A DNA stretch of 64,000 nt, taken from NCBI GenBank assembly GCA_965637545.1, contig OZ281495.1, forward strand, positions 7,998,001 through 8,062,000. The letters are read 5' to 3'. The stretch comes from Phallusia mammillata (lineage: Eukaryota). The notes beneath the pieces were generated by a model. That model was not told the origin of the DNA. It was given only the letters and a program-made list of their open reading frames with translations, and ran no database searches. Shown here piece by piece: positions 6,001-40,425 of the stretch (positions are counted from its first letter, which is position 1; the number at the start of each line of letters is the position of its first letter). The translations under genes and the position numbers were made by a program.

Positions 6001-7445
6001 TGAAAAGGGGCAGTATATATATTTCTTTACTAAATGCTGTATATTTTTAAATAGGTCACTACATGTACATAGAAACGAGTGACCCTCGACACAGTCTTGA
6101 CAAAGCAAGATTTGTTTCACCAATATTGCCAGCAACCAATGGTAAAAAAGTGACATAATTTTCCATGTCATTATCTTTTTTTCTGGTGAATCAATAAAAA
6201 AGTTGTTTGTTATGTAGCGATGTAGCGATTTATGTATGTATCGATTTAATCCCCCCCCCCCCCCCAAAAAAAAAAAACATTTTTTTCAAATTTACAGACT
6301 AAAGATATTCTTCAACGCACAAATGTTAAACAAAGGCTTATTCAAACGGTTTGCAAATATATTTTTTTACAGATGTAGTGAATCCCGGTTCTAGTGCTTT
6401 TAGATTTTATTAATTGAAGTTTCTGCATTTCCTGAAAGCTTGTTTAGACACAGTGTAAACGTAGAATAGACCTAATATACGGTTCTAAAACTGCCATTAA
6501 TCCACGAAATAATTTCAGGAAGACGGTTTTGGTAATCTTCCTCGCTTTTTTGCTGGTTTAGACACACACAGTTAAGCTTAATTAAGCATATACACGATTG
6601 ATTATGTGTTTTTAACTAGTTGTTATTTTGAGTTATCATATAACATTATTGAAATGAATGTTTTTTTTACAGGTCAATGCCTTCAGTTTTACCACCATAT
6701 GTATGTAAGTATTAGAAAGACTACTTCCAAAAAAAAATTGCTTCAAAGTATCATTAAAGGCCATTAAACAGAATCACTTGCAAATTCACACCTTAATAAG
6801 TTTAAAATGATTTTAGATTTTACTAGAAATGACGATGTTATTTTTGCAAACGACAATAGAGCAGAACCCAACCACCATTTTGATCCCATAAAACCACAAA
6901 TCCGTCAAAGCAATTAAAAAACATGTATATATATTAACACCTAAATAGGGCACCGTAAATCTCCTATTTAAATACATTAAACGACACAGATTTGTTTGTA
7001 TAGGGCAAGCACATTGGGATATTGAAAGTCTATTTAAAGAGACCAAATCGTTCCAATGCATCAGTATGGAGCCTGAGCGGCAGTCAAGGTAAGAGATACA
7101 TTGTATCTGTTGGCAAAACAAACAAACGTGATTTCCATCTACAAAAAGGAGGACACATTATTGAAAAGAAGATGTAAAAATACTTACGCCCCTTGGTTTT
7201 TGTTAAAAAGAAGGACATGTCCTCCAAAAAGAGGATGTATGGTAGGCCTAACTAGGTCACTTTGATTTTATATGTGATACAGTTTAAACCAAATATTGTT
7301 ATCAGGTGACGTTTGGTCGTTAGGAAGCGCAACTATTACTTCGACGGAGCCCTTTCAGGTTGTGTTCGAGGGAACAATGGGCGCAGATTACGAAGGTGAC
7401 ATTGCGATTGATGACGTAATAATCAGACCTTTTAACTGTTGTTAA
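1..7445 (+). CDS. Gene A (5'-partial): type II membrane protein, TM + coiled-coil stalk + C-terminal MAM domain
   Basis: GT-AG exons: <1-138 ([27 protein letters not shown]), 309-342, stalk 1892-1945, 2167-2250, 4045-4098, 4320-4403, MAM 5631-5780 ([29 protein letters not shown]), 6055-6141 ([15 protein letters not shown]), 6673-6704 ([10 protein letters not shown]), 7004-7088 ([19 protein letters not shown]), 7306-7445 ([18 protein letters not shown]). Phases are consistent. A degenerate stalk exon ends at 952. Confidence 0.85.
985..1191. mobile_element. Small GC-rich insertion with CCCTTTGC/GCAAAGGG ends (piggyBac-like MITE?)
   Basis: 8-bp inverted termini and internal ggagcaacgg repeats. 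The paralogous sequence at 2630-2720 lacks it and has cccTTAA at the corresponding site. Confidence 0.4.
1262..4782 (+). repeat. Near-identical ~1.37 kb tandem duplication (1262-2629 / 3416-4782) duplicating two stalk exons
   Basis: Direct comparison shows only a handful of substitutions; duplicated ORFs at 2097/4250 and 2221/4374. Confidence 0.95.
5631..7445 (+). CDS. MAM domain exons of gene A
   Basis: Canonical MAM motifs CDFE, WTR, TGPxxDHT, GxYMYIETS, CLxFxYHMYG, GDIAIDDV across 5 exons. Confidence 0.9.
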
Positions 7446-7670
7446 AATCCTCACGTGTATGTCGTCATTGTATTACGTGAGGATTTAAATTTGATGCCCG
7501 AGGGCATATTCATCCTATGTTTAGGACACATTTATTTCACAATTTTGTTATTTTTGCAAACATGTAGTTCGATCTTTTAACACTTACTCCACACTCATTG
7601 TCCAATGACCACAGAACTGAATATGTATTTGTTTTACTAAACACAAGCTATAATTAGGCCTTTTTCGTGT

Positions 7671-15065: not shown

Positions 15066-18000
15066 ATGACTACATCGGACAATGACACGCCTGGAATTCC
15101 GATGGACTTTTTGCGAAACGGTACGTAGCAGTTTTTTAATCTTATTTGCACGAAAGAGTACATAACCTAGAAATGCCGAATTTATATTAGGGACAAACAG
15201 ATCATTTTCCCGAACGTTTGTTGTGCACAAAGCAGCAAAAACTGGTTTTCCCGCAAAATAAAATGGTTCATAGGATAAAGATAACAAAATACATCCTGGA
15301 TTTTATGATTTTGCTGAATCTTAATATGCTAAATCTTTCCAGGCACTAATTTTGTTTACTATAAGCAGTTCATTTTATATATCTTTCTTTGCCATAATAA
15401 CACACCCAGACAATATTAAGAAGTGATGTATTTTCCTGTCAGTGATATCACTTACAATAAATAGTTTGGGTTATAGAGATTTAAGCTTCTCATTCAACAT
15501 TCAACAATTGTTTCTGTGATAAATCCGTTTCGTCATATCGTTTGCAGAAACGGACCAAGGCATTCGCGAGATGAAAAACAACGAAAGCCGTGAAAAAAAG
15601 CTGATGGAAGTATTGAAAAGTGTCCAAAGAAATCTGAAGCTGATGTGGTTGTGTCTTCTCTCCCTGCTTCTGATTTTCGCTGTCGGTTTTGTAGCACTTT
15701 ATTTTTCGGTAAGATTATATAAAAGTTTAGTAAACGTTAAGAATATTTGCATCAGCCAAGATCAAAATGTGTTCAAAATCCAAACAAACATTGCTATCGT
15801 TGGAATAATCTTAATCTAGGGTGTTTCCAAGAATTTGTGGGTTAGATCAGTGGTCGGCAACTGCCGGTCCGCGGGGAATTCGTTACCTGGCCGTATACAT
15901 TTTCAGTTTAAATGCTATGAAACATTTTACCCATGTATCCCGGGGATGATAAACTAATTTTGGCGTTTTCATTGCTAAATATTTGTAGTTTTTTTAAGTC
16001 CGGTCCGCGATCAAATTTCAGTTTTAAAAACGGTCCCCAGTTCAAAAAAGGTTTCCGACCCCTTGGTTAGATCATCGTTTTTATCAAAGAATTCAGAAAC
16101 GTTCGGAATTAGACTTGTCATAAAGCAAAACTCTAAAGTTAAAAAAACATTATATTCAAAGACCATCGATATCTTGAAAAAAATCTATACTTAAAAGCGT
16201 ATCTACCTTTGCAAAATGCTAAATTAAGACAAAACCCTTGAAGCTGCAAAGAAAGATGGGGAATTTGTAGGTCATTTGAATTTCGTGTACTGGTTTACGA
16301 ATAGGACTAAATTCGCATTCATTTCGAATATGTTTGATTTACATGTTAGATTTCTGCCAAAATGGAAATAGAAATCAGAAAAGGTAATCACCAACTATCA
16401 TTGACAAATCAACAACTTTCTGGAGCTTCTTTTCATGATGAATTCAAAATCCCGAAAAGTATGTGACTTAAAAGCATTTGACTTCCTTTTGATTGATTTA
16501 ATCCACGATTTTAATGAAAAGTTAAAGCAAAAATAAACTCATAATACTGATTTAAAAATGATCAATTTCGTTTTACACTAATAACTGTTTCAAAAATGAA
16601 ATAATCAATTTCGTTCTTGTTTAACATTGTTACATAAATTTCACTTTACAGGCGATGTACAGATGGACATGCGAAAAATGGAGAATGATTTCAAAAGCTT
16701 ATTGAGTCAAAATTCTAAATTTCAAGGTAATTGTTGTTTTATCTTCTTTTTCACTTCAGTCTGGTTGCATTAATTTGTCTGCGCATAATATGTCGTCTGG
16801 TTTAAGGTTTTAAACCTTAACTTTCCAAGACTTTAAGTTGGCAAGTTGTAAGTTTGGCCAGGCTTTTAGGGTCAGATTTTGGTTTTCAGTTTGAATGAAA
16901 CGAGACTTGTCGGTCATAATTGTGTCGTTATTTTACTTTCATTTCAAATTTGAAACTCATTCGGCCTGTATTAAATAAACTGGGTTTATGATCGCCTGTA
17001 ACTCTTAAAATTCAGTAAACAACAACATTAAACAAATGTATTGTTCGGTCTAATTTTGTGAGCATTTACGTTTTCAGATTCGGTTCAACACAACTTGACG
17101 GCGATTGGTGACGGTTTGGCGAGACTAGAAAACGCTTCAAGAAATACAGAAGGTAAAATGGAAAATACCGTTTTAATGTTTAACCTTGATCTGGTACGAA
17201 TTCAGTGAAAACAGACCCACCAATGACAGTAGATAGTTGTGAAACCTGTATTTCAGAAACCAATATTGTACATTCCATAAAAGAGTTATGTTTTGTGCCA
17301 TTTTTTGTTAATTTGCAAAAGTCTTTTGTTTTTGCAGAGGTAATTGGGGCCAGCTTTGCCCACTTCACTCGTGACTGGCAATTGGCTAAGATTGAACTCC
17401 GTGTCATGAAAGGTAAACTTAATTACAATAAATTTCTTACTGTGCAGTGTGAAAAAAGCGTATGTCTTAACATTCATAATAACAAAGTGGATAATTGTTT
17501 TCATGTACTTATAGATACCATACATCACAACCTAAGTGATTTTGTCGGCATGTTAAACAAAAGAGAAATCAAGCAGGTAATAAAAAAAACATTTCACATT
17601 TCTTAAATCAAATTGTTGTGCTTCTTGGATGTTCACATATTACACTTTGTGCGTAAAACTACATCGAAACTGCCAAATGCCATTTTACAACTTCGCCATT
17701 TTTCAGACCTCGTTCAACACAACCTGTCCGTTATCACTGATAGCTTGGCTAGACTTGAAAGCGGTGTCACAAATGCGGAAGGTAACATTAGGTGTTATAC
17801 AACAGTTGTTGTTTGACGCAGAGCTGTAAGTCGGGCTGGGTTAGGGTCGGGTTAGGGCTTGGGTTTCTTAAAAACGGACTTGCTTGGGGCCTCACTTTAC
17901 ACTCTGTGTCATTTTTTTTCAAATAGCTAGTTGCTGGACCTAACCTATTGTCAAACAGCCCTAAAACGCCTTGTTTAAAACTGATTGTCTAATGTGTTTT

Positions 18001-21000: not shown

Positions 21001-24000
21001 GATTAAGCTATGTGCGTTACTGGCTGTGTTCCCAAACGACAATGTGATTTGTTTGTCAAAAAAACGGTTTTTAATCCTTCAACAATCACAGATTCAAACT
21101 ACCTAATTTAAAACACATAAAGAGCGATTTTAGTAAGCGTCAATTCGAGAGACGACAAAGAGAGTTCTTAGATAAAAGTTAAATTAGGGCCCACGCCTAC
21201 TTTCTCTCCGAGCATTCCATTCAATCCTGGAAGTAAACACCACAAAGGGATACAATTACTTACAGCACGATCTTTTGTTACGAATAAAACGCTTAACCAA
21301 CAGTTATACGTTGTAGTTTTTCAGACTTTGTGTCTTTAGTGGTCAAACTATAAATAAATTTATCAAACAATTTCGGAATTGTTTGTTACATCAGACACCC
21401 CAAGTTCGGACATAATACATGACAAGTTTAGACCAACCCTAGACTCCTTAGCTTCGGCACCTATGCAGCTAGCCTCTGGGTGTTTAACATAAATAGGTTG
21501 GCCAACAAACTTCAGATTATGTTTGTAGGCGAAACATCCCTTTTAATTTGAAAAAAATAGTGTAAAAGTAGGCTGTTGGGTAAAAATATGGAGATTGGAC
21601 CACATAATTTTGCTCTTGTGGTTTAAGTAAGTTTTTCAACTAACAGTTTATCGCAAATACTACAATACTGTGTTCAAATTTGACACTTGTGAACCTAGAG
21701 TCAAGAGTCACTGCGATAAGCCGACAATTAGCTTTCTTTCATTAGTTCGTGTTTTTCAGGTTTGCAAAACAACTTAGTGCAACAAAACAACGATCCAAAC
21801 ATGGGGAGTCTGTCTGTTGAGAATAGTTTAAATTTGTTGAAAAGTAAAATTAAAAAAGAAACAAATGCCCAATAAAAAGTGGTTTTTGTTTTTGCAGAAG
21901 AGTTGAAGCACAACATTACCTCGATATCAAATAATGTCAACGCTTTACAAGTTCAACACACCACGAACGAAGGTAAAAGTGTTTTCGTGGAACGTTTGAT
22001 GAATTTCCGTCTCTTGCTGTTTGCATTTAACCAACAAACCTAAAAATTTTAGGATTAAAAAAATATTTCAAACACTGTTTGACGTTGTAGCTTTTTGGTT
22101 AACGGTGTTAGATGGTAAACTTGTAAACAAGATCCAAAATTGATTTTTTTTACATTATTGCGGTGTATTCAAGATTAACTTAACATTAATTTAACTATCA
22201 CCCAGCAATGAATGCAAACTATCTACAACGTCTCACTACTACAAACAACAACATGGAATCAATTCAAACAACTTTGACAGCTTTAAAAGGTAAACATTTT
22301 TTGCCATGGCCGAATTATCATGACAAAATTTAAAGCTGTCCGATACAAACAGGCTTGCAATATCACGATTTAATACTTAATCGAAATTTTAAAACGTATA
22401 GTTCAGTTGGAGAGAAATCTAAGTTCGCTGTCACGCAGTTCGAATTCAATCCGAATTAAAGTTATCTAAGTCAGTTTCACAAACTTCTACTCAATAATGT
22501 TTATCGTCATTAACCAAATGCTCTTTCCAGTAGTTTTCATTTCATAACGTTTTAAAGTAACGCAGCTATTTCCGGCTTGCTGATTTGTCAGGACAATTGT
22601 GTAGCTATTTTTTTGCAGTCGGTATTGGTCGTTGTCAACAAACAATTTTCACTTTCCTATAGTAAGAGTCGAACCTTAATGACGTAATGCCGAAAGGTCA
22701 TGAGTATCATATGATCCATCGACACAATGGGCTTCTTTACACAATAGGTTTCGAAATGATTAGTTATAAAATAGCGTTTTGAAACGTTATAGCAACAAAA
22801 AATAAAGTTAATATGCTTCCTTGAATTTTATACAACAAGGAAAAACAATACATAAGACTGGGTGCATGCGTTTTTTCCTGTAGCAAGCTAAAATCCCAGC
22901 CCGACTTACAATTTTATTTCGCCTGCTGGATTATTTATTGTTTAGATTTTTCCGCTTGTAAAGTCAATAACTTTAGTATTATTTTGCAAATAAGTTCCTC
23001 TTCTTTGGTGCTATGTAGTTTAACTTTATCCTTGTAGTTTTTTTGGAGGGAACGAAAAGCAAATCTTGTTTGTCAAAAACGTAGACAGCTATGCGAGGGG
23101 AGCTTTTGGCTTTGTTCCTTTCAAATATAATGAGACCACGAAAATATTAATTCTTGCACAAGTTTGTCATTGTGAAGACTCTGCAATGCACATTACGGTG
23201 TTTCCGAACTAAGATTTGTTTTCCTTCTTGCTTTTGGTTTCTTCAAATCTATTAGATTGAGTCACTACCCGACTTCGTTGAGTCATGTGCGCAGTTGTGG
23301 CTTACAGGCACATCTTTTTGCATTTAAATGTGACTTAGTAGTTGCCTTTAGTAAAATAACGAGTAAAAATATCAATCTAGATTCTAGACTCTAGACTACT
23401 TCCGTCTTTTGAATATGCGTTGACTAGCCAAATTAAACTTCAAATCAAAATAAACGAGCGTAATAGGTCGCTCATATATTTTTCTGGTTTAACTTGACTA
23501 AATAAAGATATGGGCCTACACACGACAAAACACATTTTTCAAGGAAACTATAAATGACTTGTAACTTTTTTGTTAAGGAACGTTGCAGCACAATATGTTA
23601 ACTCTAGAACCTGGATTTTCAACGTTACTACGTAAAACGAAGTGAATTATTCTCTATTTGTAATTCGAAAACATACGCAAAGTAGGCTAGTATAAAAACG
23701 ATGAAAAAGCAATCAGAGAAAAATACTTTAAATATACATTTTCCGATGTCAGTAGTTCTCAAATTGTGCGTCTTTTCAATTTTTAAATGGCATTTCGGTA
23801 TAGTTCCGTTTCGTAACTTTTTGTTGTTGCATCAATAAACACATCTTCTATATTAAGTTTCCTCATTAACTTTTATTTGCTGGTGCGTCGCAAGTCTAGA
23901 AAACGTTTCCAAAAGGTGTTGTACAAAAAAAGTTTGAAAACCACTGCTATATGTCATTAGATAGCTCTAATCTTTTTCTATAAATAAGAGAAAAATATTT

Positions 24001-27000: not shown

Positions 27001-30000
27001 TCCACTTGGTAAAGTCAATGTTGTTGTTGTTTCGAGGGAATGAAAAGCAAACCTTGTTTGCCAAAAACATCACAACGTAAACAGCTGTGCGAATGGAGAT
27101 TTTGGCTCTGTTCCTTCCAAATATTTCCCGGTAATTAATAAGAGCACGCAAACATTAATTCTTGCGCAAGTTTGTCATGATGAAGACTCTGCAGTGCACA
27201 TTTCCGTGTTTGCGTCAAGATTTGTTTTCCTACTTATTTTCGGTTTCTACAAATCTATTAGATTGAGTCACTGCCCAACTTCGTTGGGTCATGTGTGCGT
27301 TGTGGCTGTCAAACAAACCTTTTTTACATTTAATTGTTATATAGTACTTGCCTTTAGGAAAACAATGAGTAAATACATCAAACTGGGCTACTTCCGTCTT
27401 TCCACTTCCCGTTGACTACATGGCCTTAAACACTGGCGTAATTAGTCGCTAAAACACTTTCCCGGTCCTGCTTTTAACTTGACTAAATGCTTTAATACAC
27501 TATACTCACATACCACCGAAAATTTATTTCAAGATTAGTTAAATAGTAAAAAGGACAATATACACATGTGGGTCTACACACGACGAAACATATTTTGCAA
27601 GCAAACTATAAATGACTTGTAACTTTATTGTTCAGAAACGTTGCAGCACAACATGTCAACTATAGAATCTGGATTTTCAACCTTACAAGGTAAAGAAAAT
27701 TAAATTCTTGCTAATTTGGAATTCGAAAACATACGCAATATAGGCTAGTATAGAAACGATGAAAAAGGTGTCAGGGAAAAAAATTATATCTACATTCTTG
27801 CATGTCATAAAACAGCCCCAATTTTTTCCTACATATAAGAAAAACAGATTTCTTAATCATTCCAACGATTATCTCAACAGAAAACTTGTCCAGCAGGCCC
27901 ACAATAAGCCCGTCAAAAGTAGAATGTCCAATACAAAGTAAGTTCTTCTTATCATTATAAACCAAACACATTTTTTTCTAGAGCAGTGGTTCCCAACCTG
28001 GAGTTCGCGGACCCCCAAGGGGTCTCTGGAATGGTTTTATAGCAGTGGTTCCCAACCTTTTTGTAGTCACGGACCCCTTTTGTAAATTTTATTGGTTCGC
28101 AGAACCCCAACGTAATTTAGTCTTTTTTCGTTTCCTACGTAATACGTTATTATACTATTTTTTATGGGGGGCAGAATTTTAATCAACCTTCACAATCCTT
28201 TAAAGATTAAATCTCAATAAACCACTGTAATTTAGAAGTCAATGCATAAATTTTCTAGTGTACAAAGAATTCTATTGTTAATGTGTGTTGTGATGTCACA
28301 AATGGAGGTAATAATCTTAAGTTTACCTGATCCAAGGGTTTGATAAACAGTTTGCCGTTATATACCCGATTGAAAAAACGGTTTGGGAATTTAAAAATAA
28401 TGTACTGTTGTTAATGCTACTACAAATGTTTGCCTCCACGGACCCCCTGAAACTATCTCACGGACCCCTTGGGGCTCCGCGAACCCCAGGTTGGGAACTT
28501 GTTTTAGAGGGTCCGTAGACGCAAACATTCTTAGTACCATTTACCAAAAGTACAATATTTTAAAAGTTTCCAAACCGTTTTTACCATCCCGCATACCAGT
28601 ACAGACTGTTATTAAACCTTTGGATGAAGAAAACTTACTTTTTGTATGATCCTTACCCCCATTGTGACATCACAACACATATAAACAATATATCTTTTAT
28701 CGTATATTGCTTTGTTTTAAGTATTCCACACCAGAAACTGCATTTCTTTGTTGCATTGACTGCTACAATACAGAACTTTATTGATATTTAAGGACTGTGG
28801 CCGTTGATTAAATATCTGCCCCCAAAAGCGAAAATATGATGCAGGAAACGAAAAACATAACAAGACTAAATTACGTAGTGGGTCCGCAGACCTATCAAAT
28901 TTATTAAAGGGTCCGTGACTACAAAAAGGTTGGAAACCACTGTTCTACAGTACAGTGCCTACAGGCCAGTCAAAAATCCAGGCCGCTTTAAAATCAGTAG
29001 AACACTGATAATTCTAAGATTTTACTTGGCAACACTGATTTTCGAGCCACTTATAAAATGTGTCTACAGGCCAGATATGCTTAATCCGGCACTGCTGTTC
29101 TAGAGCAATGTTTTAAGAGCATATACTTTTTGAAGGTTTTTTATTCTTTGATGCACTTTCCAATTTCGCGTCAAGCACATTTCCACGCAGTTTGCCCAAT
29201 TACTACGAGTTTAATTACGACGGAAGAAACAATTACAGCATATATGATGGGGGCAATGATATGTATGACACAGGAAATAAGGTACAGTGTTTGGCCTATA
29301 TATTTTGTACTAATAGGTTACTGGATTGTAAGTTGAAACGTAGGTCAACAATGAACGATAGGAATTATTAATTTTAGTTAATTTCGCCTAAATTATAAAC
29401 ATAATTTCTTTTTTGCTAATTTAGCTTAAAGTCTGGAGAAACAACGAACCGAAAGTGCAAGTCATTTACAATTCGACTTACTAGTAAGTGCCACGGTAGT
29501 AGAACTTTTTTATAACAACATAAAATTATAACAACATAAAATTGTATGAGGTTGGTTTTGATAAAAACCGGCTTGGTTCGAACCAAATGGCTCACTGGTA
29601 ACTGTTTACAATCTAAACGGTAAATAGCATCCAAGTTAGTGACTAGGCCTACATGCGCGTCACTGGCAGCTGACGGGGCTTATGTGACACGAGTCGGTAG
29701 AGCTACTAACGTAAGAACTCACAGTAGCCAGGTTTGGAAATTTCCGATAGGTGACGCAACGGAGCATAGGCGTTTACAATGCTGACACGGCAATTATTGT
29801 CACCGTAAGCGCCTGTGATCCGTTGCGCCACCTACCAAAAAATTCCAAACCTGGCTGCTGTGAGTTTCTTTGTTAGTAGCTCTACCACACGATTTACTGA
29901 AATGGCTTAGCTTGCATCATACTTGTCACTGGCATGTGACTTGCATGACAGATGCCAGTGACAAAAGCTAACACGTTATTCGTGCCACATGAACCATTAT

Positions 30001-32439
30001 GACTTCAAGATTTTTTATTGTTTATGACTCGAATTTAGGAGGTAGAAAATGTAATTTCATCCGTTTTGTTTAGCCATCCACAAGGCCATTTTACCATGGT
30101 CTGCAAAGCGTTGCACCCATTCGTCTTATCCATGCTGGTGTTGAATCCTGATGGAAGATCCTGGCAGTATAACATCGAGGTAACAAGTCAATAATACAAC
30201 GCATACTTGTATACGTATTCCTTAAAGCAGTGTTTCTTACAGTTTCGGCCAGGTCCAAATTGGTAGCAAGAAAAATTATTGATTGATCGCCCGTTTTCGT
30301 TTAAAGTTTTTTCTATAAAAATCGAGACCAATGAAGTCCTACGTTTTGTGGAAGAGGCTTTTGGCCGAATCTGGTTTGACAATTTTCATCAAACTTTTTG
30401 AATCGGCCAAGTTAACATAATAAATGGAACTAATTAGTGGTGTACATATTGTAAGGGCACAAGAATCCACAAGACTAAAGTTTATAAACATTAATTAAAG
30501 CAGTAAATCAAAACTTGGATTTCATTTATCCTTTTTCAAAAAAATACCAAACTACAGTTTGACGCCAAACCACCCTATCACAGAATTCGTCAAATCAAAA
30601 AAACTGACAAAAGAATAAATATTTTGGCCTATGGATGCTACAAAATAAAAATATGTTAATCTAATTATTCCCAGAAAAACGTCAAAATAGTCATTTGGGG
30701 AATAATAATACCTAGTTTAAAAATCAAAGCAATAGATTTTATAGACGGTTGTTTTTTTTCCTTTTAGAAAACATACATCTTAGATAGAAAACGTCAACGA
30801 TTTTATTACAAAAATCTGAAATACCCGTTGTAGTTCTGGAATGTGTTAAAAGTCAACGTTAATCCTTCTGGGGATTTTTTACAAAAACTACATTGACAGG
30901 AAACTGGTAATCTGGGAGCAGACGGCAGCGGAAGCTACAGGTGGAATACTGGATCTTTATTTGTTCGATCATTCAACATAAAATACGTGTTGTATCAAGT
31001 ATACGGAGCAAACGATCCTTCTATCATACAGATATTCTTCACAGTGTCAAGTCCAGTAAGTAGATAAATAAAAAAATATTGCTGCTTTTGTGCTTAGAAT
31101 AGTGCAACCTTCTCTACACTGAGTTGATAGTTGTTTTATTCATGTTTTGTTCTGGTTCTTACCATACAAAATGGTCAAGTACTCGTTGTCAAATATTTAC
31201 AAATATTTACATACATTTTCCCAATGTTCATCAAATGTTTACAAGTGTAGAGTGAATACCAAATAAATTCAATTGATGCCTGCTACGATTCACTTGTTTA
31301 ATCTCCAGCTTATTTGATTGCTCGAAAATTCTTAAGCAAAATTAAACGTTTAAACATTTTCTAAATCTTAAATTCCAAAATATTCGTTAGCAACATTTGA
31401 TTGTTTAGAAACTTGGCTCGTCCGGATACAGTACTCTTCATTATGTGGATTCGCATAGAAACACAGCTCAAACCGATAACAAAGTCTACATGTCAGGGAC
31501 TGCTCACAACGTCTACTTCAACTATATCCTAACATCAACCACGTAAGAATTGTACTTAGTAACGACTTATATTCATAAACTTTCAGGGTCGACTGTACGC
31601 CAGTGCCCAAACCCAATATTTTGGGTCTATATAGGCTGTGTAGGCAGGGTTTTTTAAGGTTTGGTTTGGGTGACCGCTAAGTAGTTTTATGAGACAGCAA
31701 GTGTTTTATTTAAATACCAACAAATATCCATATTTGCTTAAACGGGAATTTTGGGAAACCGCTGGAGAAATTACAAACACCTTAAAAAAACACTGTGTGT
31801 AGGTATATTAATGAAAAGACTGGACGTACACATATTTACCAAATATGTTGGATTTATTTGCGTGTAGCTTTGCTTTGTGTTTTACAAGCAGTGTGTAATT
31901 GCGCAAACAAACAGAGCAACATTCCTTCATATGTAAACTGCCTGTTGAAAGCATCAATGTGTTTTCGCGAAGCTAATTCCCGGAAGTGACATCTAGCGAG
32001 TCGAAAACAGTGTTGCTCTAAGCCGTGTAACATGATCGGCTCTTGGAAATACCCACTGATTAATTGTTTGCAGCACACAAGCCACTGCAGAGATAAACTA
32101 TAACATTCTCAGTTGTGTAACTCGTTGACCATATTGGTTGTTCAAAGTTGTTAATTTACGCGTAACCGATCTTTAGTGTGTGCTTTTATTTGTAAAAGTA
32201 CTTAAGTTATGCGTTTGACAAATCTTTTAGCGTATGTGCTTATTGGGACCTTTAAAAACCTTTAAGTTTTTTCTTCTTGAATGGTTCAAAAAATCATTAC
32301 CCTTTAGTCATGCATGTGGGGCAAAGTTGCTTCAATTTACAAACGTCAAAAATTGTCGTTTTGCTTCAGATCATCGTCCAACTATGTTTCAACGAACACA
32401 ATTGAAGGAATTTTGCGAGAGATCTTTCAAGGATTTTGA
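15066..32439 (+). CDS. Gene B: type II membrane protein with very long coiled-coil stalk and unnamed DGGxDMYD/GNLGADG head (~880-905 aa if all intact exons are used)
   Basis: Exons 15066-15120, 15548-15708 (TM), 16350-16383 (or -16458). Stalk: 16652-16726, 17078-17152, 17338-17412, 17707-17781, 18610-18684, 18786-18860, 19063-19137, 19324-19398, 19639-19713, 19988-20062, 20647-20814, 21898-21972, 22206-22289, 23578-23631, 24289-24363, 24596-24658, 24805-24879, 25158-25232, 25580-25747, 26173-26256, 27636-27689. Head: 29136-29281, 29425-29483, 30074-30179, 30900-31055, 31409-31542, 32370-32439 (TGA). AATAAA at 32563. The damaged exons at 17515-17576 and 19511 must be skipped. Confidence 0.8.
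15848..16064. mobile_element. hAT-type MITE
   Basis: CAGTGGTCGGCAAC..GTTTCCGACCCCTT termini; perfect 8-bp TSD ggttagat (15840-15847 / 16065-16072). Confidence 0.8.
17819..18120 (-). mobile_element. Degenerate MITE, same family as 54747-55070
   Basis: Reverse-complement similarity (gggcttg/aagcccg-rich interior, cagagctgt terminus). Confidence 0.5.
20134..20324. mobile_element. Penelope-derived fold-back insertion (two inverted pLTR ends)
   Basis: Near-perfect inverted repeat 20132-20298 matching the termini of the element at 56632-58760; 13-bp TSD tgtttcaattaat; empty site in the paralogous intron near 25290. Confidence 0.85.
20168..20214 (-). ncRNA. Minimal type I hammerhead ribozyme motif (Penelope-type)
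   Basis: Minus strand reads ttaccCTGATGAa-gacgacctgtatcggacgtc-GAAACGTC-ggaat. Confidence 0.65.
23750..23946. mobile_element. Degenerate hAT-type MITE
   Basis: CAGTAGTTCTCAAA..TTTGAAAACCACTG termini. Confidence 0.55.
27984..29094. mobile_element. Nest of three hAT-type MITEs
   Basis: Outer 27984-28942 (TSD ttctagag); same-family inner copy in opposite orientation 28043-28501 (TSD ttttatag/ttttagag); third element 28948-29094 (TSD ctgttcta). Confidence 0.8.
29136..32439 (+). CDS. C-terminal head domain exons of gene B (uncharacterised domain)
   Basis: Six exons splice in frame (phases 1-0-2-0-0-2) to LPNYYEFNYDG..IYDGGNDMYDTGNK..HPFVLSM..ETGNLGADGSG..YQVYGANDPSIIQIFF..FNYILTS..TIEGILREIFQGF*. 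Confidence 0.8.
29696..29886. mobile_element. Palindromic MITE / fold-back element
   Basis: ggtagagctactaac...gttagtagctctacc with inverted complementarity over almost the whole length. Confidence 0.75.
31645..31795. mobile_element. hAT-type MITE
   Basis: CAGGGTTTTTTAAGG / CCTTAAAAAAACACTG termini; perfect 8-bp TSD tgtgtagg; its left end recurs inverted at 62190-62233. Confidence 0.8.
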
Positions 32440-34060: not shown

Positions 34061-37000
34061 ATGGATACACAGAACCGTGATCTGCGTGGAATGGAAATGG
34101 AACAAAATGCTTATGGTACGTACGATTGTTTTTGTCCAAGTCAAACTCTTGACTTGATGCGGACCTGACCTAATTGTTTTGTGTCTCTGAGACGATGCAA
34201 TATTAACCTGAATCAGATCAACTTCTGATTTGCAGGAAGTTGTTTTAAGGGCACCACTTCAGAGTAAATCCAGCCGAGCTTATGTTAATAAATATGAATG
34301 AGACAATTACAAGCCCGAATTTCAACTCTGCCGCATTTGCTACAAAAAATAAGTTTCTTTTTTTGTATTTTCGCGTTCGAGTGAAAATTTGGATTATGGT
34401 ATGTAAGTGTTCTACATTTCCGCACTTTTAAGAGCTTTTTTCTTTCTTTTTTTCAGAGCTTTTTTCAGAGTTGTCATTCTATTGACATTAGTTATCCCTA
34501 GCTACATAGCAAAAAGAAATGTACTTGCTTAATGTTGACGTCACTGTAGAAAAGGCAATTCGGTTTGCAAGCTTTCAAACCAACAGGTCACATTAATTTC
34601 TCAAGTCATTTGGAAATGCCGTGTTGTAATATTTCTACAATGTCTTCTGCTTTGCAGAAACGTTTCAAGGCACCTCCGCGGTGAAAAACAACGAAAAACT
34701 CGAAAAGATGATGATTGAAACGCAAAAAAGCGTCCAAAGCAATCGAAAACTGATGTGGTTGAGTCTAATTATTATACTCCTCATTTTTACTGCAGGATTT
34801 GTCGCTCTCCATTTCTCGGTACGACTATGCAAAGGTTGATGTGTTCAGCACATAAACGTTAAACTTAAACTCATTTTTGCACTTACCTTTATTAAAAAAA
34901 CGACCAACATTGCTATTGAGCAGCAGGACAAGAGGGATTGCAGAAATACTCCAATGCATAGACAGTAAAATACATTTGTTTCTCTTCAGGTTTCTGCAAA
35001 AGTAGAAAAAGAAACAAGAAGTGGTAAGATTGAACCATTTCATGCATATACTGTGTTGTCATTTTACATTTCTAAATTCTGTAAAAGTGGCTGTGTTTGA
35101 ATTGCGGATCCTTAAAGGTCAACTAACAAGGATAAAAATACATAGCCTAAATAATTCAAAACCCAAAGGATAAAAAACGTTGGTATTGCAAAAAGAAACT
35201 TGAACAGTGGTCAAACCACGCGAATCAGATTCACTGCAAAACTGTTTTAAATTAAAAATTAGCCTTAGTTAATTTAAAGTATTTTCAGCTTTGCAAACCA
35301 CCTTGTTGAAACAAACCAACAGCTCAACTGAAGCAATTCAATCTGCTGAGAAACGTTTAACTATGTGGAAAGGTAAGATTAAGAAAATTAAAAAGATATC
35401 CGCCAAAGTTTCAAAACTAATACAAATTATCTATTTTGAACGGGTAAAAATTTTAAACGTAAGATCACTTTACTATCAAAATCGTTACAAGCCCAGCTAT
35501 ACAATGGTCTGAAGGTTTCTTGTGCATTTTTGTGCACATAAAAGTGCAACAGAAAAACTCAACAAGTATTCTCCATGTTCATATTTCAAACGTTGAAACA
35601 TGACCGCGATGTGGTAAACTAAGTTTGATGCCACAATTAAACATGTCTCTTTCATCCAGCAATGAGTGCAAATTATTCGGGTCGTCTGAACGCAGCAAAC
35701 AACAACATCGAATCTATTCAAACAACATTAACAGCTTTGAACGGTAAAACTTTGTTACGATTGTCTCATTATCTTGGTGATATTTAAGCTCAATTCTCTA
35801 TGCAATCGTGTGAATGCATAAGTTTTTCTTGCGAACATTTTTCCAAAAGTGTATTTTATCTTTAACTTTTTTTGATCGGGTTTCGGGCTTGCACTTTCTG
35901 ATTCGGTCATATAAACAACAGATTTTTCACTGATGTACGATATAAAATATCGGTTTTTAATCCTAGTTAAACACTTGTCGTGTATCAACATTTCGCATGT
36001 TTTTTTCATCTAGCAATGAGTGCAAATTATTCGCGTCGTCTTACCGGAACAAACAACAACATCGACCATATTCAAACAACATTAACAGCTTTGAAAGGTA
36101 AAACTTTGTTACCATTGCTTCGTTTTTATGGTGGAATTATAGGCGCTGAAATACCATATGCAATCCTTGTATATCTTCCGAAACTTTATGTAAATTTTTT
36201 TCGATACGTGTAACTGCGCATTTTTAATAACTGACTTTGTGACTTCGCAAATGGCTGCAAACAAAAAGTTTCATTCACAAAAATCAAAGCAGAGCTGAAA
36301 CAATCGTGACTCCTTACAAAAAATATCAACTTTATAAACCAATTAAACTACTTATTCACGTACATTAATTTTACCCAACAATAACGACATACATAGGTTT
36401 TGTAAGGTGATTGATCCCGAAATAGCAACATGAGCCTTCGTAAGTTGATTTTTCTCAAAATAAATAATCAAAAGTTGTAGCGCATGAAAATACATTCGAA
36501 ATATTTTCTAAGTGCGGAACCAGGTAAAACGTCTGGTTTCCTTTTAGTGACACTTCAAAACATACAAAGGAGCTAAATCAGATTGTTTGTAATATTTTTG
36601 TCAACTTCGTTTAGATGCATTGCAGCACAACATGTCAAACATGGAATCGAATCATTTAAACTTACAAGGTAAAACTGAGACTCAAAATCTCATCCAGTTA
36701 TCCCTGTGTTCATTTTTGCACATCTACAAGGTTGCATTTTTAAGTATTTATTTAGTTTTTTCTCTCTTAATTTTACCCACTTTTGCCCAAAATTACCGAC
36801 TAAAATGGCGTCTCTACGGCTTGTAAAACTGTATTTTATTTAACTTTGTAAAGAACAAAAATAGTAATATCCTTCTATACTAGTGTTTTTTAAATATTGT
36901 TTTCTATTTTTTAATATAATATAATCGTGTCTACTATCACTGCGTTTCAAATCTTTACTCCACAATTTTGCATAATTTTCCATAAACTAATGATTTAACA

Positions 37001-40000
37001 CCAATAGATTTAAATTATTTGTGCATTGTCACTACAGATTACCTGAGTATAGTTTCAGCACAGATCACTTCAGGGATTCAAAGTAAGTTAATCTTAACTG
37101 TCGTATCCCTAAATAGCTTTATCGCCATCACATGTCTTCACAATATTTTGACGCTCAAAATCTTTTGTTTATGCTCTTTACACAAAGCTGGCATAGCCTA
37201 CCATTTTTGGAAATATGCACCCGGTCATCAGCAGTTCCTTACATATTTATGCTCATGGGAGAAACATCGCCTAAATACTTGTGTTGTGACGTTGTAGATA
37301 TAATAGATGCTTTGTATTTGTTTTTCAGTATTGAGACCTTTTAGTTGTGACTTTCAAAGTGGTTTGTGCAACTTCACTGATGATTTGAGCGCCGATTTTA
37401 CTTGGACAAGGCATTCTGGGTCAACGCCTTCAAGAAATACAGGTCCAAGTGCAGATCATACACTGGGAACTACTGAAGGTTGGTACTCAAGTACCTTGCA
37501 AGAAAAACAGGGGGAATTAATCAACAATGCCATTTAAAAAATGCCTCTTTATATATTAGACTTTAACCGCATAAAACACACTTAAACTTGTTATAATTTA
37601 GCAACCACAATTTGTCCATAACATGGAGTGAAATAATCCAGTTTTATATTAGCCTAATACATTGTACAAAAATCAAAGTTATGAAACCTAAAAAATGAGA
37701 TTACTAAAAAGGGGTAGTATATACATTTTTTACTAAATTCGTTTATATTTTAAATAGGTCACTACATGTACATCGAAACCACTGGTCGAAATTATCTTGA
37801 CAAAGCAAGACTTGTTTCACCAATGTTGCCACCAACCAATGGTAAAAAGTATTTTATTTATTTTTTTATTTTTTATTAAAAAAAAGTATTTATTATTAAA
37901 CTTATATGTTGCCACCAACATTTTTTGAAGTAACATATTAAAGTTATAACAAAAGCACAAATATTAGACAAATGCTTGTAGGTTCAAACGGTTAGCAAAC
38001 GTTACATATTTTACAACTATAGTAAATGAGACATCTTTTCCAGCTTTCAGTGCTTGTATCAGTGTTTTCAATCTTTTTTAATCACAGAACACTTTATGCA
38101 TTAAATTCATTCTGCGGAACACCAAACGAAATGTTATAATGATCCAATAAAATAAACAAACTCACTCTGAACTAATGTATTCTATACTTAAGCAGCGACA
38201 GGTCCACGCAATCACAATTACAAAACGAGTCAGATTATTACACAATAATTACAAGACTGAAACAAATCTAATGGAACGTTAAAATTGGAGATAGATTTTG
38301 GTTTTATAAAAGAAAAGCCATTTACGATCATTGTGTTAAATCAGTGATTTTCGACCGGTGTTCCATGAAACGCTAGTCCAAATTTTTGTTGCGGAACACC
38401 TGACGATCTTCCACGGAACAGTATTGTTTCGCGTACACCACTGGCTTGTAGCCTTAATTTATTAATTAGCTTGCTCAGAGAGACTGTAAACGTTTTTTGT
38501 GACTGTTGGGGTCATCTACCACAAAGCTTCCCAAACTGGCGTAACAAACTTGAAGGGTTGCAGAAAGCTATAACAATTTTACACAAACTACTCCATATTA
38601 TACTACTTTATTCGAAACGCAGCTGTTTAAACCGGTGCGATTTCGCAAAACGTTATTCGTGACTGATCTGTAGATTCTACGTCAATAAATAGGTTAATGA
38701 CGGTTGCTTTGCCTCTGTGGACAAGAGGCTTGTCACTGAAAACACTGAGTTCAAGTTGATCACACATAATAAATGATTGTTTTTTTTTTTTTTTTTTTAG
38801 AAGGCTACGTGTAAAGCAGTAGACTCCGAGTACCGGTTAGCTTGTTTTAAATTTTCGCTCGAAATAAGCGTTTCAATAAAACCAACAAACGTATATTTAA
38901 TCTGTTTATCATATAAACTGTAAAGGGTAGCAGAAAATGTGTCCTTAAGGAGATTTCGCGAATGAAAAAGCTTGGGAAGCCGTGATCTACCGCAATTACG
39001 CTCTGTTTAACTTTTTTAGAGTAATGTTTTCTTCACGTACTTAAGCTTGCCCAGATCCACTATTAGGTCTCATTGTGTGTTACATGAAAAACTTGAAACT
39101 TACATGACAAAAATTTCTGCTTTTTACAGGTCAATGTCTTCAGTTTTACTACCATATGTATGTAAGTATTAGAACAGTGGATTTTAACCTATCAGTCAAA
39201 GGGCCTCGGTATTATTATTATTTGTTACGCGACTATGCAAAAGATAACGAAACATTAAAATAGACAAAATGTCTAATACAGAATTGCTCGGGCGAATCAG
39301 GGGTATGGCAGGTTACCCAGTAGTGTAAGGAAATTGGAAGAACTTGCAAGTTCGGACTTTTTCGCCCTAAAGTCGTTGTAAAACATAAGATATACTTGAA
39401 AAGAGTTGTTTTGCAGTTACATCGGGTTGCTATAACAGGCCGCTGGATGAAAGGGTCCGTCAAAACAATTCAAAAAGAATATATACCTAACTCTTATCGG
39501 GGCGTCATCAATCTACTATTTAAATACATAAAATAACGACACATGTTTGTTTGAATAGGGCAGCCGCATTGGGACCTTGAATGTCTATTTAAATAAAACA
39601 ACTCTTCCGAACGACGTAATATGGCGCCTGAGCGGCAATCAAGGTAAGAAAAGAGATTGTAGTCTTTAACAAAGCAAACAAATGTGCAGCAAAGTTTACA
39701 TTTTTGTTTGGAAAATGATCGTTTCTTTCATATCCATTAAAATTCAATGTACCCGTGGTGGTTGTGATAAAAACGTATGTTTCGTTTCGTGAAAAAAAAT
39801 TATTTCTCGGTTGTGCTTATTTTAGGATCCATGTCGATGGCAACCATGCCTATATAATAGTGGTTCTTAACCTTTTCATCACGGCCGAACCCCTACGATA
39901 TTCTTCAGCCTTTGGTCGAACCCCAGCTAGTTACATGCTGTTTTTTTAACCCATTTTGTTTTGTGTACCACAATTACCTTTTGACCAAACATAGTGGCAA

Positions 40001-40425
40001 CAGTTACTGTTCGTCATTTTGTTAAATCTGACAACATAATACAAGCAAATTGTTTCAGGATTGCTTTAATTCCGGCAATTTTTAGTTTTTATCAAAATAA
40101 ACTTAACTTCCAATGTTCAAATATTTAGCAAATAATTTTTTTCATACAACCCTAAAGTTTGGCTGAAAAATTGGATTCAGCGTTGCCGAACCCCAGGGGT
40201 TCGATCAAAACCCGGTTTAGAACCACTGTTATAGAACTACGCCACATTGTTTTAACATATTACATGTTCAGCTTACCTGTGTTATCAGGTGACGTTTGGT
40301 CGCTGGGAAGCGCCACTATGACTTCGACGGAGCCCTTCCAGGTTGTGTTCGAGGGAATAAGGGGCACAGATTACCAAGGTGACATAGTGATTGATGACGT
40401 ATCAATCAGGCTTTGTAACTGTTGA
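34061..40425 (+). CDS. Gene C: apparently intact type II membrane protein, TM + short coiled-coil + MAM domain (~347 aa)
   Basis: Exons 34061-34115, 34658-34818 ([25 protein letters not shown]), 34990-35023, 35289-35372, 35660-35743, 36014-36097, 36615-36668, MAM 37329-37478, 37758-37841, 39130-39161, 39559-39643, 40289-40425. Total 1044 nt, open frame. AATAAA at 40653. Confidence 0.88.
38342..38984. mobile_element. Degenerate hAT-type MITE
   Basis: CAGTGATTTTCGACC..AAAAAGCTTGGGAAGCCGTG termini resembling other local CAGTGGTT/AACCACTG elements. Confidence 0.4.
39858..40228. mobile_element. hAT-type MITE
   Basis: TAGTGGTTCTTAACC / GGTTTAGAACCACTG termini; imperfect 8-bp TSD ctatataa/ttatagaa. 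Confidence 0.7.

What the first reader, a model, noticed from the sequence alone, without database searches (positions are those of the whole stretch)
29136..32439. Unnamed DGGxDMYDxGN / GNLGADGxG / VYGAxDPSI domain used as a receptor head
Seen: a ~220-aa, six-exon domain that the ORF track misses sits exactly where the MAM domain sits in the paralogs. I recall this motif triad from uncharacterised marine invertebrate and bacterial extracellular proteins, but I cannot name a family and have not verified this. Inference: an Asp/Gly-rich, possibly Ca2+-dependent glycan-binding module; its position implies ligand recognition.
Basis: partly seen in the sequence, partly recalled or inferred. Interest (0 to 1): 0.8.

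Follow-up and report, generated by a model that had tools for sequence, protein, structure and literature searches.

The report
Unnamed microbe-type receptor head domain
Six real exons of a sea-squirt gene encode an uncatalogued ~220-residue domain, otherwise found in bacterial, phage and giant-virus surface proteins, that replaces the MAM domain as the outer head of a stalked membrane protein and probably binds a ligand, possibly a sugar.

Summary
Window 29136-32439 (+) has six exons with canonical AG/GT sites and matching phases. They encode about 222 residues, carry the three reported motifs, and end at a TGA (32437-32439).

All six exons are conserved among diverged paralogs (dN/dS 0.19-0.27). 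A probable RNA contig joins exon 2 to exon 3 at the predicted junction.

No Pfam or NCBIfam model matches, and I found no paper. The family is large: a bacterial profile found 1,695 protein clusters. Members sit in giant secreted bacterial adhesin-like proteins, in phage proteins and on a giant-virus-like contig. Every named animal hit is a tunicate (Ciona, Phallusia, Styela, Clavelina).

The genome is Phallusia mammillata or very close, and holds at least 60 copies.

AlphaFold models of a bacterial unit and a Phallusia unit (pLDDT 95 and 92) both resemble the galactose-mutarotase-like beta-supersandwich next to glycosidase catalytic domains (Z 8.7-9.1).

The head follows a conserved phase-1 neck exon, just as MAM exon 1 does in neighbouring paralogs.

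Glycan binding is plausible but untested. Calcium dependence is untested. A tree neither shows nor excludes bacterial-to-tunicate transfer.

The scan had already met this domain elsewhere in this genome, nested inside intelectins. Its use as a receptor head is the new part.

The parts
15571..15708 (+). First coding exon of the same gene (context). It holds the ATG, a short basic tail and a ~22-residue hydrophobic signal-anchor segment, which implies a type II orientation.
   Evidence: Read from the sequence. Homologous first exons occur in MAM-head genes A, C and D of the window. No transmembrane predictor was run.
27636..27689 (+). Neck exon (54 nt, phase 1 in and phase 1 out), the last stalk exon before the head.
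   Evidence: AG/GT sites. Conserved about 0.5-0.6 kb upstream of head exon 1 in L025, L026, L027 and L029. Neck-like exons lie upstream of MAM exon 1 at 4047-4079 and 36617-36667.
29136..29281 (+). Head exon 1: N-terminal helix region and the I-x-DGGxDMYDxGN motif.
   Evidence: The bacterial-domain HMM matches it at E 1e-14, profile positions 17-51.
29425..29483 (+). Head exon 2 (19 codons plus 2 nt), holding the conserved Tyr of the I-Y-N segment.
   Evidence: The 3' junction to exon 3 is seen in contig record 28 of run X5. hhalign places it at family positions 64-70 (E 0.048, weak).
30074..30179 (+). Head exon 3, holding the HPF segment shared with Ciona and Phallusia units.
   Evidence: hhalign places it at family positions 84-104 (E 0.007). 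The junction is seen in X5.
30900..31055 (+). Head exon 4: the GNLGADGxG and VYGAxDPS motifs.
   Evidence: The bacterial-domain HMM matches it at E 2e-11, profile positions 104-150.
31409..31542 (+). Head exon 5 (44 codons plus 2 nt).
   Evidence: hhalign places it at family positions 165-196 (E 1e-4).
32370..32439 (+). Head exon 6: the C-terminal helix and the TGA stop (32437-32439). The protein ends with the domain.
   Evidence: hhalign places it at family positions 201-216 (E 0.012).

Best explanation
The six exons encode the C-terminal, outward-facing head of a type II membrane protein. That protein has an N-terminal signal anchor (15571-15708), a long stalk built from small phase-1 exons, a neck exon (27636-27689), and then the head (29136-32439). 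The head belongs to a large uncatalogued domain family of about 205-220 residues. The family is defined by I-x-DGGxDMYDxGN, G-x-LGADGxG and V-Y-x-A-x-DPS. It occurs in giant secreted bacterial adhesin-like proteins, in phage proteins, on a giant-virus-like contig and, among named animals, only in tunicates. Confident models of homologs give one compact domain: a beta-supersandwich of the galactose-mutarotase-like kind, capped by an N-terminal and a C-terminal helix, with the first motif on a long irregular loop. Inferred: the head is a ligand-recognition module, most likely for a carbohydrate or another microbial surface polymer. It would be held away from the membrane on the stalk, as C-type lectin heads are on type II lectin receptors. 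The gene family swaps it with MAM heads by phase-1 exon shuffling. Shown: exons, homology, family size, fold of homologs, purifying selection, position relative to the neck. Inferred: one transcript from anchor to head, ligand binding, the kind of ligand.
For: Exon structure and conservation. Exon 2/3 splice junction in a probable RNA contig. Homology to bacterial domains: 172 tblastn-confirmed loci; HMM hits to exons 1 and 4; all six exons align to the family profile in collinear order. Family size: 1,695 clusters at E<=1e-3 and 742 at E<=1e-30. No Pfam or NCBIfam model on the domain in window exons, a bacterial protein, or the Ciona and Phallusia proteins. Fold: AF2 pLDDT 95.1/pTM 0.93 for a bacterial unit and 92.4/0.91 for a Phallusia unit. 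Both give lists dominated by GH65, GH94, GH15, GH116 and GH63 N-domains, aldose epimerases and YidC P1, with top Z 8.7 (169 aligned, rmsd 3.6) and 9.1 (189 aligned, rmsd 4.2), and ESM-Atlas TM 0.53-0.61. Binding rather than catalysis is suggested by tandem repetition (7-8 units in Ciona and Phallusia, up to 5 in the listed, probably bacterial, giants). It is also suggested by the partners it is combined with: intelectin, Sushi, CUB, C-type-lectin-like plus EGF (read by eye), and MAM-type paralogs. Head position: neck exon and phase match. Exon 1 has no ATG or signal peptide of its own. A marine transcript, P0258, encodes coiled coil plus a Sushi-like domain plus this domain at its C-terminus.
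Against: No read or contig spans the neck-to-exon-1 junction, so a single transcript from anchor to head is not shown. The runs labelled RNA are only guessed to be RNA. The X5 contig has 4 mismatches, so it may come from a close paralog. The structural Z scores (8.7-9.1) are only just above the background the tool quotes for models without a clear match (7-8). Foldseek against the PDB was weak. The spliced head of this gene itself was not folded or searched as one piece. The many invariant polar residues could mark a catalytic or metal site rather than a lectin site. No ligand, sugar or metal was tested.
Confidence: 0.6

Rival explanations
1. The domain is an enzyme, for example a glycan-modifying, lyase-like or epimerase-like activity, and not a passive binding head. 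The invariant Asp/Tyr/Asn/Ser residues would form an active or catalytic-metal site.
For: Eleven to thirteen positions are invariant from bacteria to tunicates, most of them Asp, Gly, Asn or Tyr. That is unusually strict for a lectin-type site. The nearest structural class includes true enzymes, the aldose 1-epimerases.
Against: Units occur in tandem arrays of 5-9 per protein and inside adhesin-like giants next to HYR, Ig-like and FG-GAP repeats. That pattern is typical of binding modules. There is no sequence similarity to any catalytic family. In glycosidases the matching supersandwich domain is the non-catalytic N-domain.
Confidence: 0.15
2. The head mediates protein-protein contact, either self-association or homophilic adhesion as proposed for MAM domains, and does not recognise foreign ligands.
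For: It is interchangeable with MAM, a domain known (established knowledge) for oligomerisation and homophilic adhesion in meprins and receptor phosphatases. The stalk looks coiled-coil-like.
Against: The same domain is used by bacteria, phages and a giant virus on secreted or surface proteins. In tunicates it is fused to lectin-type and complement-type modules. Both facts point to recognition of external ligands.
Confidence: 0.12
3. The six exons are a separate gene, or a decaying remnant not joined to the upstream anchor and stalk exons.
For: No transcript across the neck-to-exon-1 intron was recovered. That intron (1,446 nt) is filled with high-copy repeats. One near-identical paralog has an in-frame TGA in exon 1.
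Against: Exon 1 enters in phase 1 and has no start codon or signal peptide of its own. The neck exon sits upstream in four or more paralogs with matching phase. All exons are open and under purifying selection. An exon 2/3 splice is seen in a probable RNA contig.
Confidence: 0.08

Closest known systems
Galactose-mutarotase-like beta-supersandwich domains (N-terminal domains of GH65, GH94, GH15, GH116 and GH63 enzymes; aldose 1-epimerases; YidC periplasmic P1 domain)
   Same: Overall fold of the modelled homologs. Top matches: Z 8.7 (5h3z_A, 169 aligned, rmsd 3.6) and Z 9.1 (7w2t_A, 189 aligned, rmsd 4.2). Nearly all of the top 50 rows in two independent models are of this class. ESM-Atlas TM is 0.53-0.61 to GH95, GH92 and GH116 N-domains.
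   Different: Sequence identity is 1-14%. No Pfam or PDB sequence hit. The domain is smaller (about 210 against about 270 residues). It is capped by its own N- and C-terminal helices and is never attached to an (alpha/alpha)6 catalytic domain in the proteins seen. The motif triad is unique to it. Homology is not shown.
MAM-head paralogs of the same gene family (window genes A, C and D; PF00629)
   Same: Same N-terminal anchor exon, same kind of stalk and neck exons, the same phase-1 entry into the head (read for genes A and C), and the head at the C-terminus.
   Different: No sequence relation. The MAM HMM hits only 5648-7439, 37346-40422 and 62341 onward in the window, not 29136-32439. The exons have no Pfam hit.
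Other tunicate uses of the same domain: tandem-repeat proteins (Ciona XP_078491493, Phallusia CAB3263223 and A0A6F9DJY-type) and intelectins split by the domain (Styela LOC120328249)
   Same: Same domain family, same motif triad, 30-45% identity to the head exons.
   Different: Those are secreted tandem arrays, or a domain nested in a lectin fold. Here there is one copy at the C-terminus of a type II stalked membrane protein. The receptor-type heads lack the conserved Cys of the S-I-C-E-V segment.
Type II stalked lectin receptors of vertebrates (e.g. CD23, DC-SIGN, langerin); analogy only, from established knowledge
   Same: Layout: short cytoplasmic N-terminus, signal anchor, repeat or coiled-coil neck, and a C-terminal recognition head.
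   Different: The head is not a C-type lectin domain. No sequence or fold relation. Oligomeric state and ligand are unknown.
Reported bacterial-to-ascidian gene transfers (cellulose synthase; rusticalin C-terminal peptidase domain, PMC6339383)
   Same: A domain common in bacteria and phages but, among named animals, found only in tunicates.
   Different: Here the tunicate sequences do not nest inside any sampled bacterial group. They form their own side of a well-supported branch together with a giant-virus-like sequence. Direction and timing of any transfer are open.

Membership tests
Unnamed DGGxDMYDxGN domain family (bacterial adhesin-like proteins, phage and giant-virus proteins, tunicate LOC104266555-type repeats) | Motif 1: I-x-D-G-G-x-D-M-Y-D-x-G-N near the N-terminus | tested here: met
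   Present in exon 1. Invariant in 16 paralogs and in 46 bacterial units. HMM E 1e-14.
Unnamed DGGxDMYDxGN domain family | Motifs 2 and 3: G-x-L-G-A-D-G-x-G, then about 25 residues later V-Y-x-A-x-D-P-S | tested here: met
   Both lie in exon 4. HMM E 2e-11, profile positions 104-150.
Unnamed DGGxDMYDxGN domain family | Collinear match over the whole ~205-220-residue unit | tested here: met
   Done exon by exon. The order on the profile is exon 1 at 17-51 and exon 4 at 104-150 (bacterial profile), and exon 2 at 64-70, exon 3 at 84-104, exon 5 at 165-196 and exon 6 at 201-216 (family alignment A7). Exons 2, 3 and 6 are weak on their own (E 0.007-0.05). The joined peptide was not searched.
Unnamed DGGxDMYDxGN domain family | Compact helix-capped beta-supersandwich fold | not tested
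   Folded only for a bacterial unit and a Phallusia tandem-type unit. This gene's spliced head has no single reference, so it was not folded.
Galactose-mutarotase-like supersandwich superfamily | Fold match to solved members, well above background | tested here: inconclusive
   Z 8.7 and 9.1 with homogeneous hit lists. The tool's stated background is 7-8, and Foldseek against the PDB was weak.
Galactose-mutarotase-like supersandwich superfamily | Sequence or profile relation to a member family (e.g. Glyco_hydro_65N, Aldose_epim) | tested here: not met
   No Pfam hit on the domain at E<=1 in full-length bacterial and tunicate proteins. The PDB profile search gave only chance hits.
Galactose-mutarotase-like supersandwich superfamily | Sugar bound in the sandwich cleft | not testable with these tools
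   Model coordinates and ligands were not available.
MAM domain (PF00629) | Match to the MAM profile | tested here: not met
   No hit on exons at E<=10. The genome-wide MAM scan hits other places in the window, not 29136-32439.
Type II stalked receptor architecture of this ascidian gene cluster | N-terminal signal-anchor exon shared with the MAM-head paralogs | tested here: met
   15571-15708 is 60-75% identical in translation to the first exons of genes A, C and D. The hydrophobic stretch was read directly.
Type II stalked receptor architecture of this ascidian gene cluster | One transcript carrying anchor, stalk, neck and head | tested here: inconclusive
   Only the exon 2/3 junction was seen in a probable RNA contig. 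Phase and synteny support the join.

The most novel reading that the evidence does not exclude
A surface-binding domain of bacteria and their viruses entered the tunicate lineage once, possibly through a giant virus. It was then cut into six exons and became a general-purpose non-self recognition module. In Phallusia it multiplied to 60 or more copies. It was shuffled onto type II stalked receptors in place of MAM, into the intelectin fold, next to Sushi, CUB, C-type-lectin-like and EGF modules, and into tandem arrays. That would make it a lineage-specific family of glycan-sensing immune receptors of foreign origin.
Probability: 0.3. Interest if true: 0.8.

Novelty: new variant of a known kind. 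Interest (0 to 1): 0.62.

Why it matters
This would add a well-defined, easily modelled domain family with more than 1,600 sequence clusters to the catalogue. It would also give tunicate immunology a candidate recognition module that the lineage has expanded and shuffled widely. Because named animal members are all tunicates while bacteria, phages and a giant virus carry it, it is a testable candidate for another foreign acquisition in tunicates, after cellulose synthase. The MAM-versus-new-head swap on one stalk scaffold is a clean natural case of exon shuffling of receptor heads. The domain is small, lacks conserved disulfides and models confidently, so binding and structure experiments are straightforward.

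Tried and rejected
- Pfam and NCBIfam scans of single exons, of a full bacterial protein and of the Ciona and Phallusia proteins gave nothing on the domain.
- ESM-Atlas feature search with exon 4 and with a Ciona unit gave no usable hit.
- A bacterial genome scan with the exon 4 pattern found nothing. The exon 1 pattern succeeded.
- A PDB sequence-profile search gave only chance hits to CTF3.
- Foldseek against the PDB gave low TM (0.2-0.4) hits to START and GH domains, not usable alone.
- MAFFT alignments of exon fragments against long tunicate proteins (A4, A5) stacked the fragments wrongly and were discarded.
- The word search with exon 4 rows (A6) found no full-length receptor-type protein from any species, so no database protein confirms anchor plus stalk plus head.
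- RNA runs: no listed holder is on record as RNA. X1 and X2 behave as DNA. Only one small contig in X5 was informative.
- Literature searches for the motif, for LOC104266555 and for MAM/type II/Phallusia found nothing relevant. Rusticalin (PMC6339383) is a different domain.
- ApeC, or any other Pfam-listed invertebrate recognition domain, is rejected by the empty Pfam scans.
- All searches of this gene were done exon by exon. Folding used database homologs.
Full report
**What is there.** The window is AT-rich (about 36% GC) and intron-rich, with no N runs. It is G000:C2:7998001-8062000. In 29136-32439 (+) I read six exons with AG acceptors, GT donors and consistent phases:
- exon 1: 29136-29281
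- exon 2: 29425-29483
- exon 3: 30074-30179
- exon 4: 30900-31055
- exon 5: 31409-31542
- exon 6: 32370-32439, TGA at 32437-32439

They encode about 222 residues, and the protein ends with them. Exon 1 carries DGGNDMYDTGNK. Exon 4 carries GNLGADGSG and VYGANDPSI.

**Is it more than chance?** Exon 4 has at least 62 matches in the same genome and exon 1 has 46.
- About 20 lie in a cluster on C2 at 7.95-8.82 Mb (67-98% identity).
- About 33 lie in a tandem block on C4 at 18.57-18.67 Mb (35-52% identity).
- The rest are on C1, C3 and C7.

tblastx and tblastn against six diverged paralogous loci recover all six exons, open and in the same order. Per-exon dN/dS is 0.19-0.27 at dS 0.64-0.91, so these are coding exons under purifying selection.

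A contig of run X5 (guessed to be RNA) lies on 29435-29480 and continues at 30074-30184, with three letters between them. Those letters differ by one base from 29481-29483. This is the predicted exon 2/exon 3 splice. The contig has four other mismatches, so it may come from a close paralog.

**Species.** Exon peptides of the C4 block are identical to parts of Phallusia mammillata proteins P0190 and P0138 (UniProt A0A6F9DJ-type). The genome is therefore P. mammillata or something very close.

**Gene context.**
- The first coding exon (15571-15708) holds an ATG, a short basic tail and a ~22-residue hydrophobic stretch. It is homologous to the first exons of the three MAM-head genes in the window.
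- Stalk exons with a repeated Q-H-N-L-T/S type peptide follow.
- The last stalk exon, the neck (27636-27689, 54 nt), enters and leaves in phase 1. Head exon 1 enters in phase 1.
- The same neck peptide lies 0.5-0.6 kb upstream of head exon 1 in L025, L026, L027 and L029.
- Neck-like exons lie upstream of MAM exon 1 in genes A and C, and MAM exon 1 also enters in phase 1.
- Exon 1 has no start codon or signal peptide of its own.

So the domain does sit where MAM sits. No read spans the neck-to-exon-1 junction, so the full transcript remains inferred. Here that intron is 1,446 nt long and full of high-copy repeats.

**What the domain is.** No Pfam or NCBIfam model hits the exons.

A degenerate scan of one genome per bacterial species with the exon 1 alignment (pattern I-x-DGGxDMYD) gave 315 candidates, of which 172 were confirmed by tblastn. 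They come from Bacteroidota, Verrucomicrobiota, Planctomycetota, Cyanobacteriota, Chloroflexota, Zixibacteria and Eisenbacteria. They lie in very long open frames. In Bizionia algoritergicola the protein has 1,416 residues with FG-GAP, six HYR repeats and a T9SS sorting tail. The roughly 200 residues that hold the motifs have no Pfam or NCBIfam hit.

The bacterial consensus shows the same three motifs in the same order. An HMM of the bacterial units hits exon 1 (E 1e-14, positions 17-51) and exon 4 (E 2e-11, positions 104-150). Profiles of exons 2, 3, 5 and 6 align to the family alignment A7 at positions 64-70, 84-104, 165-196 and 201-216. All six are collinear, though exons 2, 3 and 6 are weak alone.

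**Family size and spread.** The bacterial profile (A3), run against 1.84 billion representatives, gave 1,695 clusters at E<=1e-3 and 742 at E<=1e-30. Many proteins have 2-9 units.

Named eukaryotic members are all tunicates:
- Ciona intestinalis XP_078491493, 7 units
- Phallusia mammillata CAB3263223, 8 units
- Styela clava LOC120328249
- a Clavelina lepadiformis Sushi protein with 2 units

The Styela protein is an intelectin. Residues 107-273 and 545-596 match human intelectin-1 residues 15-186 and 223-277 (E 5e-52). The domain (284-506) is inserted between them.

Unnamed marine transcripts combine the domain with other modules:
- a C-type-lectin-like region (read by eye) plus EGF (P0195)
- Sushi (P0269)
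- CUB (P0203)
- EGF (P0208)
- a coiled coil plus a Sushi-like domain, with the domain at the C-terminus (P0258)

P0196 lies on a 12.8-kb intron-less contig with Erv1/Alr, UCH, SNF2-type helicase and prolyl-hydroxylase-like genes. That gene set looks like a giant virus. Foldseek against viral models gave three strong matches: one unnamed entry and two uncharacterised tailed-phage proteins (E 9e-10 to 9e-6, TM 0.64-0.75).

**Fold.** AlphaFold2 on the bacterial alignment gave pLDDT 95.1 and pTM 0.93. On a Phallusia tandem-type unit, with a mixed alignment, it gave 92.4 and 0.91. Both models show an N-terminal helix, a long irregular loop carrying motif 1 (the least confident part), about eleven strands and a C-terminal helix.

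An exhaustive structural comparison with 48,161 PDB representatives gave hit lists made almost entirely of galactose-mutarotase-like supersandwich domains:
- N-domains of GH65, GH94, GH15, GH116 and GH63 enzymes and of polysaccharide lyases
- aldose 1-epimerases
- YidC P1

The top scores were Z 8.7 (169 aligned, rmsd 3.6) and Z 9.1 (189 aligned, rmsd 4.2). The ESM Atlas search agrees (TM 0.53-0.61). Foldseek against the PDB was weak.

The Z values are only slightly above the tool's stated background. I therefore take the fold class as likely and homology as unproven.

**Function.** No experiment or ligand is available. The points favouring a binding module are:
- tandem repetition of the unit
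- its presence in adhesin-like bacterial giants and in phage proteins
- fusion in tunicates to lectin-type and complement-type modules, including nesting in intelectin
- interchange with MAM on a stalked type II scaffold
- a fold class that in glycosidases lines the sugar site

Eleven to thirteen invariant positions (Asp, Gly, Met, Tyr, Asn) run from bacteria to tunicates, and this head retains nearly all of them. They point to one conserved site, a metal or ligand pocket. An enzymatic site cannot be excluded. Calcium dependence is compatible with the data but untested.

**Origin.** I built a maximum-likelihood tree of 69 units (quick search, SH-aLRT support only). It puts all tunicate units, five of six unnamed eukaryotic transcripts and the giant-virus-like units on one side of a 99% branch. 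All 46 bacterial units are on the other side, together with the P0031 units (source unknown) and the sixth unnamed transcript, P0208.

Tunicates are therefore not nested within a sampled bacterial group. The tree is unrooted, and the bacterial sample was chosen by motif. The receptor-type heads of this cluster were left out because that would have needed joined exons. A single old transfer is plausible from the patchy distribution, but it is not shown.

**Relation to earlier notes of the scan.** Notes s1-549884 and s1-388466 report an ISDGGxDMYDxGN module nested in intelectins of this genome, related to bacterial and viral proteins. I confirmed the same arrangement in Styela and the microbial relatives independently. 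Notes s1-358906 and s1-408668 describe the type II stalked MAM receptors and the neck exon. I re-derived the neck, though here it is 54 nt and not 72. So the domain had been seen before on other DNA of this genome. Its use as a receptor head, the fold assignment and the family census are what this report adds.

**Verdict.**
- Observation: confirmed.
- Interpretation: partly supported.
- The head is a real member of a large unnamed domain family with a probable supersandwich fold.
- Ligand recognition, possibly of glycans, is the best-supported reading, at moderate confidence.

Noticed in passing
window 27934-29102 and 31608-31795: Very high contig depth and many loose ends in DNA runs X1 and X2 mark high-copy repeats. 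One lies in the intron between the neck and head exon 1, the other in the intron after exon 5. Part of 31645-31782 also matches L027 on the opposite strand.
   Followed up: no
G000:C4:18577960-18672407 (L033 = C4:18612000-18621999): A tandem block of about 33 diverged units of the same domain, each split by introns. Exon peptides are identical to Phallusia mammillata proteins P0190 and P0138, which carry 3-8 units.
   Followed up: partly
L015 (G000:C2:8136456-8136587): The near-identical paralog 108 kb downstream (92-100% identity through the introns) has one in-frame TGA inside its exon 1 match. It is a possible pseudogene or an assembly or allele difference.
   Followed up: no
L115 (JGI 3300027836 contig, 12,837 nt), gene 5909-7588: A protein with one unit of the domain plus a Gly-rich tail sits among Erv1/Alr, UCH, SNF2-type helicase, 2OG-Fe(II) oxygenase and PAP2 genes. 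The contig is densely packed and intron-less and looks like a giant virus. Its unit groups with the tunicate units in the tree.
   Followed up: partly
P0191 (Styela clava LOC120328249), residues 284-506: The domain is inserted inside an intelectin fold, between the parts that match human intelectin-1 residues 15-186 and 223-277. Earlier notes of the scan report the same layout in this genome.
   Followed up: partly
P0258 (JGI metatranscriptome contig, 355 aa, 5'-partial): It encodes a coiled-coil stretch, then a Sushi-like domain, then the domain at the C-terminus. Its first residues resemble the end of a membrane anchor. It is a possible stalked type II relative in another marine animal.
   Followed up: no
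window 23580-23627: A second copy of the neck-type peptide (81% identical to 27638-27688) lies 4 kb upstream within the stalk region. This suggests an internal duplication of stalk and neck exons.
   Followed up: no
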